DNA of 63,675 nucleotides, counting the filler, from Octopus bimaculoides (lineage: Eukaryota), in the NCBI RefSeq assembly GCF_001194135.2. It is 5 parts of 5 records of this genome, joined end to end, with 100 filler letters (N's around TTAATTAATTAA, not from the genome) between each part and the next. Parts side by side here need not be neighbours in the genome. Positions count along the whole stretch, not along the records: positions 1 to 31,741 come from NC_068988.1; 4 more parts are not named here. One strand, 5' to 3'. A program made the position numbers and the translations under genes. The notes below the pieces were generated by a model. That model did no database searches. It was not told the origin of the DNA and saw only the letters and a list, made by a program, of their open reading frames with translations. Below are positions 1,747-24,781 of this stretch, one piece after another; the first letter of the stretch is position 1; every line of letters starts with the position of its first letter.

Positions 1747-2075
1747 GTAGGCGTAGCTGCGTGATAAAAAGCTTGCTTCCAAACCACATGGTTCCGAGTT
1801 CAGTTCCCTTATGAGTAGATTCAGTGAACGGAAACTGAAAGAAGCCCATCGTATATAAATGTGTGTGTGTGAGTTTGTCCCCCCACCACCATTGCTTGAA
1901 AACCGGTGTTTGTGTATTTACGTCCCCGCAACCTACCGGTTCGACAAAGAGACCGATAGAATAAATACTAGGCTTACAAAGAATAAGTCCTGGGGTTGAA
2001 TTGTTCGACAAAAACACTTCAAGGGGGTGCTCCACATTGGCCGTAGTCAAACGACTGAAACAAATAAAAGAATAA
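1747..2075 (+). mobile_element. SINE family B, part of the body deleted
   Basis: tRNA-like head (aagcttgcttccaaaccacatggttccgagttcag), gaaactgaaagaagccc, internal (TG)n, and a 3' tail gaccgatagaata..ctgggg..gtgctcca..gactgaaacaa. Matches the copy at 47858-48259. Confidence 0.8.
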
Positions 2076-9399: not shown

Positions 9400-9509
9400 T
9401 GTTTTAAATGTAATGTGAGTAATGTTAGAAGGTAAAAACTATTTACATTGAGAATGTACAGCAGCGGTTCCGCTGCCATACTGTTGATATAATATCTTAA
9501 ATATTGATT

Positions 9510-9722
9510 TCAAATTTTGACTCAAGGCTAGCAATTTCAGAGCAGGAGACAAGCAGATTACATCGATCCCAGTGTTCAACAAATACTTATTTTATCAACG
9601 CCGAAATTATGAAAAGCAAAATTTACCTCGGCGGAATTTGATCTCAGAACGTAAAGACGGACCAAATAACGCTAAGCATTTTGCCCGGTGTACTAACGAT
9701 TCTGTCAGCTCGCACCTTAAAC
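9510..9722 (-). mobile_element. SINE family A (tail type 2) with 19-bp target-site duplication
   Basis: Head gagctgacagaatcgttag, B-box-like gagatcaaattcc, tail caaaatttgaaa. aatatcttaaatattgatt is repeated at 9491-9509 and 9723-9741. Confidence 0.85.
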
Positions 9723-10354
9723 AATATCTTAAATATTGATTGAATATCATAATATTGATAAATTGACAAGCTTAACATAATTTCATATTTTTCTTTCTTA
9801 CTAGTAATGAGTATCTACTATTTTGTCTATAACTCGTGTTTATATGAAAAATTTCAAACTGAGTTAGTTCTTTAACAATTAGATGAAAGTCAATGCAAGA
9901 TGAATGGTGCATAACCAGAATGGAGCCACTGAACCAAATTATTTAAACAATAAACTAAGAGCCAAATGACAACTTCTGTGAGGTCGTTTAAACTGCTAGA
10001 AACAGCTGCCAAACTCCTGCAAATTACACATATTACCATCTTACGATTATAAAGCATATGGATAATGTAGTCATTGATATATAAAAAGACGGTGTAGTCA
10101 TAGTTGGAAAGTCTTTGTTCATAGCTAAAGAGCAACAATAGCTAAGAAAGAAAATATCTCCACTTGATTTCTAATATGCTTATCTCTTGCACAATTAAGC
10201 CCTTTATATATTAATAATGGATACTTTCGAAATAGTAACTTCCAGTTGACATAGGGTAGTGCTTTAACTTAGTCGCTATCAGGCAATTAAACAGATATGT
10301 ATGTCTTTGGAATAAACTGAACTATGTTGAAAATATCTCAAGAGGAATCTGTAG

Positions 10355-10723
10355 TATATCAAAAATCCCATTGCACGCCCTACAAAAAGTCAAGCATATC
10401 TTCCTGTTCAAGTTTATAAGATAGATTTTGGAAGGGCTCTCATTTCCAAATTGTTTGGACGTGCAAATTAAAGAGAACTTCATGCGTTCCATTACACTTG
10501 TGTCCTCGCAAAGAACTCTTAGGGAAATGAGTTTTCCACCTCGAATGTTGCTCAGCTTCTGTGATTTAGTCGAATAAGAAAGAGCAGTACCAATAACATT
10601 TATGACTATTTTCAGGGTCTCTGGAACTAGTACGAGGAATGGAGAAAGTTTCTCTCGGGTTGGAATGTTGTCTTTTATGCTTGCAATAGAGCAAACTTCG
10701 CTAAAGTTAATACATTGCAGTAA
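10355..10723 (+). pseudogene. Possible decayed Mutator-like (MULE) transposase fragment
   Basis: Plus frame with several stops: KIDFGRALISKLFGRAN*RELHAFHY ... IYDYFQGLWN*YEEWRKFLSGW..NTLQ. This loosely resembles the MULE D-F-E-x-A...C-x-F-H and Y-F-x3-W motifs. Weak similarity, judged by eye. Confidence 0.3.
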
Positions 10724-11610
10724 ATGATACCGTAACTACGTCATATGGACCGAAACAAATTGCAACAGGTTACGGAAAGTTAAAAATCATTGACTACCGA
10801 CTGCAGTCAGCATCACTTCAGACAATAGTCATCTCAGCTTCAAACTTCACCCCTTGCAGCCATATATATATATAAGTAACGCTAAAGGTACAGTCGGACT
10901 TATGACTATATTTGGAAACAGTCTTCACTTTTCATAACTTTACTACACAAATGAACATGTCACTCTATATTTAGGGGATTATGCCTTTGTTTGGATATCA
11001 ACTTATATTTCAATGTAATCTATTGTATTATTTTTTCATTTACTATTGTATTATACGTCTATTATGTATAAATGTTCCGTGTACTTTTTGTTCTTTTATA
11101 ATGCATAATGAAAATGAAATAGAACAGACTTGAAAAGAATATCTAAATGCTTTAGAGAATTGCCTTTCCTCAATAACATTCACTTATTTTTCCTTTTCAT
11201 TATCAGAACCAAAACGAAAACGTTCTTCAATGAAAAATGGAAAAAATGTTTTTCGATTTAGCGAAAGAACCTCTGTGTGATCTCGTTACTCACACGAAAT
11301 ATCATCAATATCTTCCTATGTAATACCTCGCTGTTTAAAAAGGGGAACATGTTCGGTCATCGGTCTACTCGATTAGTTCTGATCTGAGCCCAAATAACAA
11401 GAGCAAACATGCTTTACTTAAATTTCAGAATTAGTTGGAAATGTTTATAAGGATAGTGTGACTATTCTGACGGTAGACAGTCTAACAATCTCCTACACCT
11501 TAACTAGTCNNNNNNNNNNNNNNNNNNNNNNNNNNNNNNNNNNGGGTGGGCGGGTAGACTCTGTTCCTTAAAATAAGTAACTTTTGTTTTCATTATTAAG
11601 GTAACTCAAA

Positions 11611-11890
11611 GCATGAGCAGGCAGAATCGGTAAAACGTCGGAAAAAATGCTTAGCGGCATTTCAACCGTCTTGACGTCCTGAGTTCAAATTCCGCCATGG
11701 CCGACCTTGCCTTTCATCCTTTCACGGTCGATATAAGTACCAGTTGCATACTGGGATCGATCAAATCGACTGGCCCCCTCCCAAAAAATTTCGGGCCTTG
11801 TGCCTTTAGTAGAAAAGGATATAATAAGTAGATGTAATCGACTTTTCCTTCGAAATTGCTGGTCTTGAGCCAAAATTTGAAATCAATGTT
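11611..11890 (+). mobile_element. SINE family A carrying tail type 1 followed by tail type 2
   Basis: gcagaatcg...gagttcaaattcc...gcctttcatccttt...ccttgtgcctttagtagaaaagg, then gatgtaatcgac...tgctggtcttgagccaaaatttgaaatc. Confidence 0.8.
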
Positions 11891-11991
11891 AAGGCTACTA
11901 ATAATAAATGCTGCTTAGTTTTATAATTAGGAACTGAGCAGAGGTGCAAGTTTGCAGACTCTTTGATCGTAAGTTCGTTCTCTGGATTATA

Positions 11992-13192
11992 GGGGAGACC
12001 GGGTCTAGCTGTTACATTTTTTCATTGTTTTGCCTTCGCACCCACATAAATGAACACAGCTGAAGTTTCTTTTCATATTTAATTAATAAAACATCTTTAT
12101 TTATTGTTATCACCAGCAAAAAAAAACAGAAATTACATAACATTAATTAGACAGGTTCTAATTAATGAGGCGGTGTCAGCAGTAACAATTTTCCCCGAGT
12201 GCGGGTACGTTGTGACACTTACTGGGGTACTTTATTACAACTGTCGATAACTCGGGATTATGTTAACAAACAAGTTTAAAATGAATACGTCTCCTGTTTC
12301 TTGCATCTAGGAAGTATTATTTTAATTACTTAACTGTGCTTTGAACCACCTCAAATCCTAACTGTAATACTGAGAGTCCTCATTAGCCAATTTCCCCATT
12401 GTTACATGTGCCATCTAGTCGGAATCGTCCTCCATTAACTTCTCACCACACAGATCACACAGAAAGTCCTGTCGTCCATCGGAACAGTCAGTGTGTGCCC
12501 AGTCTTTACAGATCATGCAGTGCACCTATTCTTCACCTGGAACGGAGCTGGAATACCAATCTGAGCAGACAAAGCATTTCCAATCGGCGACTTGCTTGCT
12601 GCGAGGCTGCTTCCCTTTGCCTTTACCTATTTTAGTTGACTTTTCTTTCCCTTTTGTTGCCTTTTCTGTGCTAGTTGCCTTCTTTGATTTGGATTTCCGT
12701 TCGTCTATTTCATCCACTATGCGCTGCTTTACGGTAACATCCCGTAATGATTTCTTTTCATCCACAACTTTTCTGGCGGCTCTTTCCATAACATCAGGAG
12801 GAGTATCCCTCCTTGTAGTCTTCCTTTCGTAATTTCTAGGCATGGCATGTTAAACACAGCACTAGCAATGCATGGCATCCAGGACACACCTTCATATAAC
12901 GAAGGCAATTTCCAACACTTCCTAATGAGCCACAAAGTACTTCAGTAACATCACTTGTGCTTTAGTAGTTAAGGAAATAACTTTGTGGCAAAATTTCACT
13001 TTTGGAGTAAAAAATCATTTTTTGAGCCATACCTTTCCTGGTGACAGCCCGCCAGTGAAATACACATGTGCAGTCATGATGCTATGGAGTTGGCCTTCAC
13101 AAGGTAGAGACCCGAGTACCACCTATTTCTTGAAGTTGGAAACAATGGGCTTGTAACAACTTACCCGTGTAACAACTAGAGCCGGTCTCCCC
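11992..13192 (-). mobile_element. Complete non-autonomous TIR DNA transposon (Tc1-mariner superfamily, pogo/DDE_1-like), 1201 bp
   Basis: 25-bp TIRs ggggagaccgggtctagctgttaca (11992-12016) and tgtaacaactagagccggtctcccc (13168-13192), 23/25 match. TA lies immediately outside both ends. Internal transposase-derived ORF. Confidence 0.9.
12415..12843 (-). pseudogene. Internally deleted transposase: psq-like HTH start + Lys-rich linker + PHD finger, with one nonsense codon
   Basis: MPRNYERKTTRRDTPPDVMERAARKVVDEKKSLRDVT|VKQRIVDEIDERKSKSKK...WKCFVCSDWYSSSVPGEE*VHCMICKDWAHTDCSDGRQDFLCDLCGEKLMEDDSD*. Has Cys4-His-Cys3 spacing, a TAG where W is expected, and no DDE domain. Confidence 0.8.
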
Positions 13193-15044
13193 TATTTTGT
13201 GTTGAGCTCTTGAGCATGTTTCATAATTTTATATATGATATTTTTTTAAAATAATTCGTAATTATTGTTAATAACTAGCAGTTGGCTCTCTTAGTGTAGA
13301 GGAAAAACCTTCAAGTCTGTCCAATGTAATCTTTTTATGCACGTGTGTTGGAATTGAACTCACTGATCTGCATTTGACACAACGTCCCCATGCACTTGTC
13401 CACGACTCTAGGGGTAGTGGCTGGAGGAATATTAAGTAATATACCAAAACTTTACCGAGTAGTTGTATCTTATTTTTTCTCTATATGCTTCGTAAAGAAA
13501 TCATTATGAGTTACATGTTGTAGCGAACTCAATAGAGTAGAGGCAAACTTTCAACGATCAGTATCCGAAAGTTGGTTTCGTTTCCCCGTGTAGCTATCTA
13601 CTTCACGTCTTAAATACTATAGAAGAAGCATTAATATCATGTCTTATATTTGTTCTCTAATAAATGCGATAGCTATATAGAAAAGTAGTGATAGTCAGAG
13701 ATAATAGGTTTACTAAACTTCAGAAACACAAGATTTAAAAGTTGTCAAAACATTACTTTTTACCGAGTGAATTGACAGTAGTGTGAGAGTATTAGCAGAA
13801 GAGTCAGTTGCTTGACTCCTTGCACCAACACTGATCACTGTACATACACTTAGTAGATGTTAAGTATGTGGTGAATACAGCTTATTGCTATATGTAGCGA
13901 GGCTTAGTGTGATTATTGAATATCTTGTTGGCTTCCACTGCTGAGTTTCAAGCTATCTTCGGGCCTTGTCTGTAAAAGACAACGCGTGTAAGCCCTAATG
14001 TATTTTCCCTTCAAATTCCTGTGGAGGATTTACTTATAGTACCATTAGTGAATTGAGGGGATACTTTTTCTGTTAAGACTTGTATTTAATCACTTGCCTT
14101 TAGTTGTCAGTACCAATTAAATTTCCTCACTGGGTGCTTAAACAGTCGAAGCTAAACACCACAGAGTATAATTTTTTCTATGTTCATCAAAAGCGTCTTC
14201 ATAATTATTTGCAGTTTTAATTAAGATTCTTGTGCTCTTGTTTATAGATTCAAATTCATTAGTTTGATTATAAAGAGTCGATTATCTCTGTCAAGACAAT
14301 AATCAGAAGACAACATCAACTAATAATGATGGAGTTTATATTTTGTCCATCATATATTAATAAGAAATTAATTCTTCTACGCAAAGTAATTGTCGCAAAA
14401 TTGTTCTAGTAAATTGGACGCCATTGATAATTTGATTAATTAATTTTTATTTGTGTTAATCATCAATATTCACATGAAAATGAAGTCCTTCTGGTCAAAA
14501 ATGAAATCGATATCAAAGCCTATGGCTATCATGAGGAAGAACTAATTACACGTTTAATTTTTTACCAACCAAATCATTTTTTAAATACAAACATATTTAC
14601 ATTGAAAATTTATAACCTACGATCATTTATAGTATAAAATGATGCGTTTCTTTCACCATTTGTAAATGTATACCATAATGTATACCTTAAACTGAGAGTC
14701 CTAATTAGTTTGATTAATAAAAGTGTTAACATGCCAACTGAAGGTACGCAGTCTGCACCATTTCAACTGCCAACATAAACTTATATGACATATAGTAGTC
14801 CGTTGTAGGTAGCGGGAATATTCTTTAATTGATAGGTGCTACTTTAGCTTATTGTTCCGGTTTCAAATTTTATAATAAATGTAACTGATAACACTGAGCT
14901 TCACCAGGCAAACTTCCTCCATACACCCTAGGGCAGAGTTTTCCGTCTCTGTCTCTCCCTCTCGCAGCCAATAAATTGTGGCCTGTATTTTATTTTACAT
15001 TATAGATAGTTCCACATCATTATTATAATGACAATCCATGTACC

Positions 15045-15222
15045 AACCGCATGGAAGAAGGAGTCAGTCGATTACATTGGCCCCAGTACTCAACTGGTAT
15101 TTATTTTATCGACCCGCAAAGTTGAACCCGGCAGCATTTAAACTCAGCACGTCGAGACAGGACGAAATGCCGCTAAGCATTTTGCCCGACGTGCTTAGCA
15201 AGTCTGTCAGCTCACCGCCTTA
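15045..15222 (-). mobile_element. SINE family A, degenerate
   Basis: Reverse complement of taaggcggtgagctgacagac...cttagcggcatttcgtcc...gtcgataaaataaataccagttgagtactgggg. Confidence 0.75.
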
Positions 15223-19396: not shown

Positions 19397-20490
19397 ATGT
19401 ACTCCTACTACGTGTATGAGCTCAACATAGTAGCCAGAGCATCCCTACAAGACAATGTTGATGATCTAGAAGCTAACACTATGGAGAGTATCCAGCAAAT
19501 ACCTAACTCCATCCACCAGAGTATAGAAATAACGATAGACTACCCTAGTAAGCACCCTAACTATAGATTACCCGTTTAAGACATTGAACTCTAGCCAGAA
19601 ACGAAGAACGGTAAGGCCCAGATCCTTCACTCTCATTATGCCAAACCCATGGCCACTAAGTACCTTGTTCACAAGAACGCAGCGATTGCAGACAACGCCA
19701 AGTTCAACATTCTGATAGCTGACTTGGTGAGAATGATTAGGAATGTGTCTCGCATGTGTGACCCAATGGAATTGGAAATACACATACAACACTTCATCCA
19801 CTTCATGCAGTTCTCTGGCTCTGACCAAAGGGACAGGATTATAGTGTACAATGGAGCCAGGACTAAGTACAAAACCATCAAAGAGAGTGATGCTAAATCC
19901 TGGAACAGCACGGAAAGGACCAGTAATAAGATAAATAAGGCCAACACTTGGTATGACAACAAAAAATACCAGAGTGTCATGCTCGTTGATGCTACCCTTG
20001 GCGGCGAACTGCGATACCTTTTGAGAAAAACATCAAGTAAGGCTAATCTACGAATTAAAGTAATTGAGAGGCCTGGTACCCCTTTAAAATCCTTGATCTG
20101 CAATACATAACCTTTTGATAAGTTCCCCCTGTACGGAGTACAGTTGTGTTGTATGTAGGATGAACCCACAGGTTAACTGTAAGATTAGGAATGTAGTGTA
20201 TAGCTTACGGTGTACTGAGGGACAGAGCAGAAACATGACAACTACCTATAAAGGAGAGACTGCACGCAGCATAGGAGAGCGTACAGTTGAACATTGGCGA
20301 CAGCTCAAAGAAGGGAAAAGCTCGTCAGTGCTCTACTAACCTGCAGAACATGGAGGCTTGATTCATAGTATAGAGGTTAAAGTACTATCGACACATAGAA
20401 TTGACACACTTAGATTACAGAAGCTACACACATAACGGTAGACTGACCGAGCCTCAATAGAAAACATGAATGAAACAGTAACACCCACCA
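19397..20490 (+). mobile_element. Penelope-like retroelement remnant: RT C-terminal half + GIY-YIG endonuclease
   Basis: YVYELNIV (decayed YVDD), NSIHQSIEITIDYPS..LPV*DIEL, HYAKPMATKYLVH, TWYDNKKYQSVML, IKVIERPG, PCTEYSCVVC..NCKIRNVVYSLRC..TYKGETARSIGERTVEH, LNRKHE*N. RT followed by GIY-YIG, with several stops and frameshifts. Confidence 0.85.
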
Positions 20491-24287: not shown

Positions 24288-24505
24288 GATGGATTGGCAG
24301 AATCGTTAGAGCGTCGGACAAAATGCCTCACGACATTCATCCTAATTTCTTAAGTTTTAAGTTCACATCCTGCCGGAATCAAATTTTGCCTGTCATCACT
24401 TCGGTGTCGAGAAGATAAAGTACCAGTCTAGTATAGGGGTCGATTTAAACGACTAACCTCCCCGCTCAAAATTGTTCACCTTGTTTAAAAATTGGAAACA
24501 ATTAC
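24288..24505 (+). mobile_element. SINE family A, degenerate (tail type 2)
   Basis: ttggcagaatcgttagagcgtcggacaaaatg...aagtaccagtc..ggggtcgattt...aaaaattggaaacaatta. Confidence 0.7.
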
Positions 24506-24511
24506 ACACAT

Positions 24512-24746
24512 ATTTTTCTTTTATCTTTTAATTGTTTCAGTCACTAGGTGGCGGCAGTGCTGGGGCACCGCCTTGAATTCTTGTCGAATGAGTCGATCCC
24601 GGTACTTATTTTTTAAAGCTTATTCGACTCTGTTGCCGAATAGCTACGTTACGAGGACGTAAACAAACCATCACCGGTTGTCAAGCGGCGGTGGAAGACA
24701 AACACAGACACAGACGCGCGCGCGCATATATATGTGTGTGTGTGTG

Positions 24747-24781
<35 letters not shown>

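What the first reader, a model, noticed from the sequence alone, without database searches (positions are those of the whole stretch)
11992..13192. Complete 1.2-kb mini-transposon encoding a psq-like N-terminus fused in frame to a PHD finger, DDE domain deleted
Seen: 25-bp TIRs (23/25), TA on both sides, a minus-strand ORF with gccATG context at 12843, AATAAA signals near 12096-12105, and a Cys4-His-Cys3 PHD finger with a single TAG at a Trp position. The join near 12733 (KKSLRDVT|VKQRIVDE) keeps the frame. Established: pogo/DDE_1-type transposases begin with a psq-type HTH and many end in a Lys-rich linker plus PHD, and PHD fingers often read histone H3 tails. Inference: this deletion derivative could be a family of small non-autonomous elements expressing a chromatin-reader mini-protein, for example a repressor or targeting factor analogous to internally deleted P-element repressors. 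The HTH looks only partly retained.
Basis: partly seen in the sequence, partly recalled or inferred. Interest (0 to 1): 0.72.

Follow-up and report, generated by a model that had tools for sequence, protein, structure and literature searches.

The report
Decayed deletion copy of octopus pogo transposon
This 1.2-kb stretch is an ordinary non-autonomous copy of an octopus pogo-type DNA transposon that lost its enzyme core in one internal deletion, and its leftover small reading frame is a decaying by-product, not a working chromatin-reader gene.

Summary
Window 11992-13192 is a complete element with 25-bp inverted ends (2 mismatches), TA on both sides, and a minus-strand frame. The frame joins the first 37 codons of a pogo-type transposase to its Lys-rich linker and C-terminal PHD finger, and has one TAG at an invariant Trp.

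A 2.73-kb parent recovered from Octopus vulgaris shows that a single 1,520-bp deletion with 2-bp CC microhomology made the element. The deletion removed the HTH recognition helix, an intron, the second HTH and the whole DDE_1 core.

The same junction occurs in six O. vulgaris copies at unrelated TA sites, so this is an amplified non-autonomous family. The mini-protein idea is not supported:
- All seven copies carry different disabling lesions.
- Private substitutions are neutral (omega 0.96; 1.34 over the PHD codons, all substitutions).
- Two copies inserted independently after sharing a premature TAA.
- Two other derivatives of the same parent have different breakpoints and no joined frame.
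- No intact 142-aa product is on record.

The PHD finger is a conserved part of the full-length transposases (103 of 119 relatives). Retention of the frame is best read as chance. This is a new member of a known kind, of low interest.

The parts
11990..11991 (.). TA target-site duplication, left
   Evidence: The other complete copies also have TA on both sides, at unrelated sites.
11992..12016 (+). Terminal inverted repeat. This is the 3' end of the element in ORF orientation. It ends in the TGTTACA motif.
   Evidence: 0 mismatches to the pattern; none expected by chance..
12096..12105 (-). Two overlapping AATAAA poly(A)-signal-like hexamers in the 3' untranslated part
   Evidence: AATAAA is present at the same place in 4 of the 6 aligned copies (win, L002, L005 and the overlapping form; L004 has a deletion there, L006 has AATAAAC-CAT variant). 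Function not tested.
12399..12406 (+). Internal copy of the TTGTTACA subterminal motif, just past the natural stop codon. Putative transposase-binding site.
   Evidence: There are 7 copies in the 1,273-bp family consensus against 0.07 expected. The positions are conserved in the intact relative L007.
12415..12843 (-). Remnant fusion reading frame of 142 codons. ATG is at 12841-12843, a premature TAG is at 12526-12528, and the natural stop is at 12415-12417.
   Evidence: The family consensus of this frame is intact.
12733..12843 (-). Codons 1-37. This is the N-terminal remnant of transposase exon 1: a basic KRK stretch and the first part of the HTH_psq. The recognition helix is missing.
   Evidence: HTH_psq is only weakly scored even in the parent (13.2 bits against a cut-off of 20.4).
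12732..12735 (-). Deletion junction. Parent position 480 is joined to parent position 2000 (about 1,520 bp lost), with 2-bp CC microhomology. In this copy codon 37 is Thr (ACC) where the family has Ala (GCC).
   Evidence: Six O. vulgaris copies have the same junction.
12577..12732 (-). Codons 38-89. This is the Lys-rich linker that lies between the catalytic domain and the finger in the parent.
12448..12576 (-). C4HC3 PHD finger, codons 90-132. It is interrupted by TAG at codon 106 (12526-12528), which replaces an invariant Trp. All eight zinc ligands are present.
   Evidence: The fold of the closest intact relative's finger matches PHD fingers only.
13152..13159 (-). Subterminal TTGTTACA motif, the second direct copy at the 5' end in ORF orientation
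13168..13192 (-). Terminal inverted repeat. This is the 5' end of the element in ORF orientation. It has 2 mismatches to the other end and contains TTGTTACA.
   Evidence: The first 41 nt of the family consensus are identical to the end of the intact relative L007.
13193..13194 (.). TA target-site duplication, right

Best explanation
Window 11992-13192 is a dead copy of a non-autonomous family derived from a pogo-superfamily (DDE_1) DNA transposon of octopus.

Origin (shown). A full-length element of about 2.73 kb encodes a two-exon transposase with this layout: HTH_psq, CENP-B-type HTH, DDE_1 core, low-complexity spacer, Lys-rich linker, C-terminal PHD finger. One internal deletion of about 1,520 bp, with 2 bp of microhomology, removed the 3' end of exon 1, the intron and most of exon 2.

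Mechanism of the deletion (inferred). This is the signature of interrupted gap repair or end joining after excision.

Spread (part shown, part inferred). The derivative kept both 25-bp terminal repeats and the repeated TTGTTACA subterminal motifs. Transposase supplied in trans by full-length relatives could therefore cut and paste it into TA sites (inferred). At least seven copies with the identical junction lie at unrelated loci (shown).

The reading frame (inferred). The in-frame fusion of 37 N-terminal codons to the linker and PHD finger is a by-product of where the two breakpoints fell. It was not needed for spread, and it is decaying neutrally in every copy examined. In this copy the lesion is a TGG-to-TAG change at an invariant Trp of the finger.
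For: Anatomy of the element:
- TIRs and TA flanks are present.
- Parent L001 9632-12363 aligns to the element as positions 1-480 and 2000-2724.
- The junction reads gatgttgCC|gtaaaa, with CC present at both parental breakpoints.

Identity of the parent:
- It has a GT..AG intron inside the HTH_psq coding region and a DDE_1 match above Pfam's cut-off (24.4 against 22 bits).
- It has 1,303 DDE_1 relatives across Metazoa.
- 103 of 119 long relatives end in the same C4HC3 finger.
- All 42 sampled fingers match Pfam PHD.
- A model of the finger (pLDDT 91) has only PHD fingers among its top 50 PDB matches, with query TM-scores of about 0.5-0.7.

Evidence that it is an amplified family:
- Six O. vulgaris copies (L002-L006, L010) share the junction.
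- Their flanks are unrelated, and the complete copies carry their own TA duplications.

Evidence of decay:
- 7 of 7 copies are broken at different sites.
- ORF divergence is 5.3% against 5.9% for the noncoding parts.
- Private substitutions give omega 0.96; all substitutions in the PHD codons give 1.34.
- 7 stop-creating substitutions were observed against 9.8 expected.
- L005 and L006 share TAA at codon 79 but sit at independent insertion sites.

Other support:
- L008 and L009 are independent deletion derivatives with different breakpoints.
- L007 is a complete relative with an open transposase frame across the same intron and identical ends, so suitable trans-acting transposases exist in this lineage.
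- TTGTTACA occurs 7 times in the consensus against 0.07 expected.
- The process is documented for Tc1/mariner elements, where microhomology-mediated miniaturisation gave rise to MITE families (PMC3814204, listed).
Against: - The consensus of the seven copies is an intact 142-codon frame. The founder could therefore have encoded a protein.
- Counting all substitutions gives an omega-like ratio of 0.65 (43 synonymous of 134 against 23.4% expected, p = 0.024).
- Variants shared by two or more copies split 10 synonymous to 10 non-synonymous. This could reflect some constraint on master copies. It could equally reflect recurrent hot-spot mutation, since many of the sharing patterns are mutually incompatible, or non-independent counting.
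- Only seven copies were seen. They were found through gene models, which favours copies with long open frames. The genome-wide copy number and the fraction of intact copies are unknown.
- Trans-mobilisation and expression were not tested.
Confidence: 0.9

Rival explanations
1. The deletion derivative is a family that expresses a small nuclear PHD-finger protein. This protein would act as a regulator, either a repressor of the parent element like the KP product of P elements or a chromatin-targeting factor. Its in-frame junction would be kept by selection.
For: - The junction is in frame and shared by all family members.
- The consensus frame is intact.
- The ATG context and AATAAA signals are present.
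- The finger is a genuine PHD fold whose closest structural matches are histone-tail readers.
- There is a weak synonymous excess when shared variants are counted.
- The window copy has only one disabling lesion.
Against: - 0 of 7 copies are intact.
- Private changes are neutral, and the PHD codons show no constraint.
- A subfamily kept transposing with a stop at codon 79, upstream of the finger.
- The HTH recognition helix and the second HTH are deleted, so no DNA-binding domain remains for a KP-like competitor.
- Sister derivatives have breakpoints that keep no frame.
- No intact product was found among 5.8 billion clustered proteins.
Confidence: 0.04
2. The window copy specifically is rescued at the RNA level. 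Coleoid cephalopods edit A to I very widely, and UAG edited to UIG is read as Trp, exactly the invariant residue. On this reading, this single-lesion copy could still yield a full mini-protein.
For: - TAG is the only disabling lesion in the window copy, and it sits at the invariant Trp codon.
- The degenerate parent L001 carries the same TAG at the same codon.
- Extensive A-to-I recoding in coleoids is established knowledge. It was not tested here.
Against: - G-to-A is the commonest substitution in these elements (48 of 921 non-CpG G sites).
- 20 of 426 ORF sites are hit in two or more of six copies, so a recurrent TGG-to-TAG change is unremarkable.
- The window copy's frame is no better conserved than its noncoding parts (4.7% against 3.4% divergence from consensus).
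- No RNA data are available.
Confidence: 0.02
3. The segment is a host gene or exon derived from a transposase (a domesticated PHD protein) and not a mobile-element copy.
For: The O. vulgaris annotation contains gene models built on such copies (P0001-P0005, P0129).
Against: - It is bounded by intact TIRs and a TA duplication.
- It is present in multiple decayed copies at unrelated loci, with none intact.
- The window has no neighbouring exons with family matches.
Confidence: 0.01

Closest known systems
Internal-deletion (non-autonomous) derivatives of Tc1/mariner/pogo DNA transposons, formed by microhomology-mediated deletion and amplified in trans (for example the mosquito Tc1/mariner miniaturisation described in PMC3814204)
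   Same: - TIRs and a TA duplication are retained.
- A single internal deletion with short microhomology removed the catalytic core.
- Several independent derivatives of one parent exist.
- One derivative was amplified to multiple loci.
- The coding remnant decays neutrally.
   Different: At 1.2 kb it is larger than classical MITEs. It also happens to retain an in-frame fusion of the N-terminus to the C-terminal domain.
pogo superfamily transposases (pogoR / Tigger / Passer families; Gao et al. 2020, PMC7386202)
   Same: - The parent has an N-terminal HTH_psq-type region, a CENP-B-type HTH region and a DDE_1 core, with a TA target site.
- Relatives are named tigger- or jerky-like by source databases.
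   Different: - The parent clade carries a conserved C-terminal PHD finger. That survey does not mention one: 'PHD' occurs 0 times in its text.
- The family within pogo was not assigned here, because no phylogeny was made.
KP and other truncated-transposase repressors of P elements
   Same: An internally deleted element whose remnant frame joins N- and C-terminal transposase parts.
   Different: KP keeps the THAP DNA-binding domain and a dimerisation region, and it is expressed. Here the DNA-binding helices are deleted, all copies are broken, and no expression evidence exists.
Histone-reading PHD fingers (BPTF, MLL1 PHD3, ALFIN-like, TAF3, ARID5)
   Same: - C4HC3 ligand spacing and a PHD fold, with query TM-scores of 0.6-0.72.
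- Profile matches to these fingers.
- Aromatic residues (Y/F/W11, W20, W29) fall where methyl-lysine cage residues lie in MLL1 and BPTF. The alignment is; the cage positions are from memory.
   Different: It is attached to a transposase, and no binding data exist. The analogous Cys-rich C-terminal domain of piggyBac binds DNA and not histones (from memory). The ligand is therefore open.

Membership tests
pogo / IS630-Tc1-mariner DNA transposon (non-autonomous derivative) | Terminal inverted repeats | tested here: met
   25 bp, 23/25 matching, none expected by chance. The same ends occur in all related copies and in the intact relative L007.
pogo / IS630-Tc1-mariner DNA transposon (non-autonomous derivative) | TA target-site duplication | tested here: met
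   TA on both sides in the window copy, L002, L005, L006, L008 and L001. L004 has GT/TA. L003, L009 and L010 are truncated at one end.
pogo / IS630-Tc1-mariner DNA transposon (non-autonomous derivative) | A parent that encodes a DDE_1 (DDD) transposase | tested here: met
   The L001 fragment scores 24.4 bits against a cut-off of 22 for PF03184. There are 1,303 relatives, almost all annotated PF03184. The domain is absent from the window element itself, so the element is non-autonomous.
pogo / IS630-Tc1-mariner DNA transposon (non-autonomous derivative) | N-terminal HTH_psq plus CENP-B-type HTH DNA-binding region in the parent | tested here: inconclusive
   HTH_psq scores only 13.2 bits (cut-off 20.4) in L001. 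PF05225 and PF03221 are recorded for some full-length relatives, and the region aligns throughout.
pogo / IS630-Tc1-mariner DNA transposon (non-autonomous derivative) | Mobilised as a unit: several copies with one junction at unrelated sites | tested here: met
   Seven copies share the junction, and their flanks are unrelated apart from other interspersed repeats.
MITE (miniature inverted-repeat element) | Small size (typically under about 800 bp), no coding capacity, high copy number | tested here: not met
   The element is 1,201 bp (1,273 bp in the consensus) and has a 142-codon remnant frame. Copy number could not be measured. It is better called an internal-deletion derivative.
PHD finger | C4HC3 zinc-ligand pattern and a match to the Pfam PHD profile | tested here: met
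   All eight ligands are present and invariant in 42 relatives. All 42 match PF00628 at E < 0.01. The window finger scores 24.1 bits (cut-off 24) with Trp restored, and 20.7 as it stands.
PHD finger | PHD fold | tested here: met
   The model of the finger of P0009, which is 71% identical to the window's, has pLDDT 91.3. Its top 50 PDB matches are all PHD fingers. The window's own finger could not be submitted because of its stop codon.
PHD finger | Binding of histone tails | not testable with these tools
   There is only positional similarity of aromatic residues to known cages (plus memory).
KP-type truncated-transposase repressor | Retains the transposase DNA-binding domain | tested here: not met
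   The deletion starts after SLRDVA. The recognition helix and the whole second HTH are gone.
KP-type truncated-transposase repressor | Intact, expressed reading frame | tested here: not met
   0 of 7 copies are intact, and no intact product is on record. Expression itself was not tested.

The most novel reading that the evidence does not exclude
While still intact, the founder of this family encoded a 142-residue nuclear protein made of a basic N-terminus, a Lys-rich linker and a PHD finger. This protein could have interfered with, or redirected, its parent's chromatin targeting. If so, rare intact or RNA-edited copies might still do this. In the window copy UAG could be edited to UIG, which is read as Trp. 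That would make it a PHD-only, DNA-binding-free counterpart of transposon-encoded repressors. The weak synonymous excess among shared variants is the only hint in this direction.
Probability: 0.04. Interest if true: 0.6.

Novelty: new member of a known kind. Interest (0 to 1): 0.2.

Why it matters
The element matters little in itself. It documents one more non-autonomous pogo derivative in a cephalopod genome, and it shows that several 'hypothetical protein' models in the O. vulgaris annotation are fragments of this transposon.

The more useful by-product concerns the parent. A large, pan-metazoan clade of pogo-type transposases carries an invariant C-terminal PHD finger whose closest structural matches read histone H3K4 methylation. 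The pogo survey I read does not mention this finger. If it reads chromatin, it would be a natural case of histone-mark-guided DNA transposon integration, and this could be tested with recombinant protein.

Tried and rejected
Steps that led nowhere or were blocked:
- An exact-protein look-up of the window's 105-aa ORF found nothing on record. The source assembly and any transcripts could not be traced.
- A search for accession SRR11869389, the source of the intact relative L007, found no paper. Its organism remains unknown.
- A first literature search failed on syntax. A first Pfam call failed because of stop codons.
The closest intact relative's finger was used instead.
- Rfam found nothing in the window. 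Pfam found nothing for two other window ORFs.

Readings considered and rejected:
- Precise loss of a 5'-UTR intron in the window copy. The 94 bp missing upstream of the ATG cannot be excised as GT..AG to give the observed sequence. It fits a deletion with GTT microhomology.
- Segmental duplication of L005 and L006. Their flanks share only short non-collinear repeats.
- Naive Nei-Gojobori pN/pS (0.54) as evidence of selection. It rises to 0.65 after correction for the element's own mutation spectrum and to 0.96 for private changes. The out-of-frame controls give 0.84 and 1.42.

Full report
**1. Observation**

- The arms 11992-12016 and 13168-13192 are inverted repeats with 2 mismatches in 25. 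The pattern occurs nowhere else in the window, and none is expected in shuffles.
- TA flanks both ends.
- On the minus strand, an ATG in a gccATG context at 12841-12843 opens a frame of 105 codons that ends at TAG (12526-12528).
- The same frame continues for 36 more codons to the natural stop at 12415-12417.
- The last 43 codons before the acidic tail hold a C4HC3 pattern with all eight ligands present.
- Two overlapping AATAAA lie at 12096-12105 on the minus strand.

**2. Source organism and relatives**

- Searching the conceptual 142-aa product returned only Octopus vulgaris 'hypothetical' proteins.
- Five of them (P0001-P0005), and later a sixth (P0129), contain the same join, SLRDVA|VKQRIVDEI.
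- Three others (P0006-P0008) continue with KDFE and, in P0006, VNFMTLQRY. That is an uninterrupted HTH_psq.
- About fifteen short interspersed repeats in the window also match the O. vulgaris loci.
- The window is therefore a cephalopod scaffold, probably Octopus. It is rich in microsatellites and N gaps.

**3. The parent**

The DNA around these proteins was fetched from the O. vulgaris chromosomes. L001 9632-12363 is a full-length-type element of 2,732 bp with the same ends and TA flanks.

The window element aligns to it as parent positions 1-480 and 2000-2724. One deletion of about 1,520 bp therefore separates them. At the breakpoints the parent reads ...gatgttgCC|aaagat... and ...aaccaCC|gtaaaa..., and the family junction reads gatgttgCCgtaaaa. 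That is two bases of microhomology.

The parent copy is itself degenerate, but its layout is clear:
- Exon 1 encodes MPRNYKRK...SLRDVAKDFE.
- A GT..AG intron spans L001 10125-10241.
- Exon 2 carries the rest of the HTH_psq, a CENP-B-type HTH region and a DDE_1 core (PF03184, 24.4 bits against a cut-off of 22).
- A Q/P/N/D-rich spacer follows, then the Lys-rich linker and the finger.

The deletion removed the end of helix 2 and the recognition helix of the first HTH, the intron, the second HTH and the entire catalytic domain.

**4. The transposase clade and its finger**

- A conceptual translation of the parent finds 1,303 DDE_1 proteins from insects, echinoderms, fishes, Hydra and bivalves. 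Most are 600-680 aa and are covered end to end.
- In a 12-protein alignment the eight zinc ligands and two Trp residues of the C-terminal finger are invariant.
- 103 of 119 long hits end in this finger.
- All 42 sampled fingers match Pfam PHD at E < 0.01. The window's finger reaches the cut-off once the TAG is read as Trp (24.1 against 24 bits), and scores 20.7 bits as it stands.
- A profile of the fingers finds MLL1 PHD3, BPTF, PHF13, ARID4 and KDM5A as its best single-domain PDB matches.
- An AlphaFold model of the finger of the closest intact relative (P0009, pLDDT 91.3) has only PHD fingers among its top 50 Foldseek matches, with query TM-scores of about 0.5-0.72.

The TAG does replace an invariant Trp, W20 of the finger.

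**5. It is a family, and it moved**

Six O. vulgaris copies carry the identical junction:
- L002 9506-10807
- L003 9579-10668 (its 3' end is replaced by a GT microsatellite)
- L004 17555-18823
- L005 9558-10725
- L006 about 9558-10854
- L010 9481-10703

They lie on at least five chromosomes. Their flanks are unrelated except for other interspersed repeats, and the complete copies have their own TA duplications.

The motif TTGTTACA occurs seven times in the 1,273-bp family consensus against 0.07 expected. It sits in both TIRs, as a second direct copy 16 bp inside the 5' end, and at several internal places. The same positions are occupied in L007. These are plausible transposase-binding sites (inference).

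L007 is a 2,977-bp Logan contig from an unidentified sample (SRR11869389). It holds a complete related element with these properties:
- about 70% amino-acid identity to the parent
- an open 613-codon exon 2
- an open exon 1 and the same intron
- TA flanks
- a 5' end identical to the family consensus over its first 41 nt

Suitable helper transposases therefore exist in this lineage.

**6. Is the mini-frame functional?**

The consensus of the copies is an intact 142-codon frame. Every individual copy is broken, each differently:

| Copy | Lesions |
|---|---|
| window | TAG at Trp106 |
| L002 | third Cys changed to Arg, CGA to TGA at codon 124, two 1-bp insertions |
| L003 | CAA to TAA at codon 108 |
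| L004 | ATG to CTG, a 1-bp deletion and a 1-bp insertion |
| L005, L006 | a shared TAA at codon 79, plus further stops; L005 also lost most of the finger |
| L010 | a frameshift after codon 12, an extra deletion of about 60 bp, a stop, a Cys to Ser change, a truncated TIR |

Rates and selection tests:
- Divergence from the consensus is 5.3% in the frame and 5.9% in the noncoding parts.
- The neutral expectation was built from the element's own noncoding substitution spectrum, with CpG sites treated separately. On that basis all substitutions give an omega-like ratio of 0.65 (43 synonymous of 134 against 23.4% expected, p = 0.024).
- Stop-creating changes are at the neutral level, 7 observed against 9.8 expected.
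- Substitutions private to one copy, which arose after insertion, give 0.96 (p = 0.90). All substitutions in the PHD codons give 1.34. The two wrong frames give 0.84 and 1.42.
- The residual signal comes from 20 variants shared by two or three copies, 10 synonymous and 10 not. Many of their sharing patterns contradict one another, which suggests recurrent hits.
- L005 and L006 share the premature TAA and five other variants, but sit 2 Mb apart at different TA sites with unrelated flanks. The element therefore transposed after its frame was dead.
- No intact product was found when the consensus was searched.

**7. Other derivatives**

L008 (parent 1-601 joined to 2092-2724) and L009 (parent 65-573 joined to 1679-2723) are independent deletion derivatives of the same parent. 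Both break inside the intron, and neither keeps a joined frame.
- Three different deletions that all spare the two ends are the usual product of interrupted repair after excision.
- One in-frame case in three is the chance expectation.
- The PHD coding region lies within the 3' 630-1,050 bp that all three retain.

**8. Verdict**

The best explanation is an ordinary internal-deletion derivative of a pogo-type transposon, mobilised in trans and now decaying (confidence 0.9).

Limits of this verdict:
- Only seven copies were examined, and they were found through gene models.
- No genome-wide census could be made.
- No RNA data were available.
- The source species is not identified.

**9. Comparison with what is known**

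- The process matches microhomology-mediated miniaturisation of Tc1/mariner elements (PMC3814204).
- The parent belongs to the pogo superfamily as surveyed by Gao et al. 2020. [quoted passage not shown]
- A recent O. vulgaris repeat annotation lists many Tc1-Mariner families without this level of detail.
- The element is too large, and too 'coding', to be called a MITE.
- It fails the defining features of a KP-type repressor.

Noticed in passing
Relatives P0009-P0128: A large pan-metazoan clade of pogo-type DDE_1 transposases carries an invariant C-terminal PHD finger (103 of 119 long hits). Its best sequence and fold matches are H3K4me-reading fingers. The pogo superfamily survey PMC7386202 does not mention it. 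It may be a chromatin-targeting or end-binding domain.
   Followed up: partly
L008 9579-10868 and L009 9622-11257 (O. vulgaris): These are two further, independent internal-deletion derivatives of the same parent. Their breakpoints lie inside the transposase intron: parent 1-601|2092-2724 and parent 65-573|1679-2723.
   Followed up: yes
L007 1-2977 (Logan SRR11869389, organism unknown): This is a complete related element with open exon 1, the conserved intron, an open 613-codon exon 2, TA flanks and ends identical to the window family's. The contig ends just outside the element, as expected for a multi-copy, recently active repeat.
   Followed up: partly
L001 11825-11827 compared with window 12526-12528: The same TGG-to-TAG change at the invariant finger Trp occurs independently in the degenerate full-length O. 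vulgaris copy and in the window copy. It is compatible with recurrent G-to-A mutation. In a coleoid, A-to-I editing could read UAG as Trp, but this was not tested.
   Followed up: no
window 12854 (between 12853 and 12855, just 5' of the ATG in ORF orientation); L002 about 9843-9935: The O. vulgaris mini copies carry 72-94 bp just upstream of the ATG that the window copy lacks. L001 lacks a different part. The region holds TTGTTACA-type motifs in both orientations. The window's gap fits a deletion with GTT microhomology and is not a GT..AG intron loss.
   Followed up: partly
O. vulgaris gene models P0001-P0008, P0129 (GCA_951406725.2): These annotated 'hypothetical proteins' are fragments of this transposon family. 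Several models (P0003, P0005, P0007, P0008, P0129) splice the element's first exon to exons 8-50 kb away, so they are probably artefacts or chimeric transcripts.
   Followed up: partly
window 1807-2075, 9491-9723, 11593-11822, 15056-15222, 24351-25278, 28983-29449, 31201-31678: Short interspersed repeats of about 110-480 bp are shared with most of the fetched O. vulgaris loci. They are SINE-like by size and frequency. One lies 170 bp to the left of the element.
   Followed up: no
window 27516-27659 (-), part of ORF 26694-27659: A short frame (MRDLGIDMSDDASFQVHITRMATKCRRLAGWILRTFRTRDKETMMILW) runs into an N gap. From memory it resembles the C-terminal part of non-LTR retrotransposon reverse transcriptases. 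It has no Pfam match.
   Followed up: partly
window 19649-20110 (+): A 153-codon open frame has no Pfam match. An antisense 166-codon frame overlaps it. Its nature is unknown.
   Followed up: partly
window 1-31741: The scaffold is interrupted by many N runs bordered by TG, TC, TA, AG and ATAC-type microsatellites. The large 'inverted repeats' reported by the repeat finder are N runs and simple repeats.
   Followed up: no
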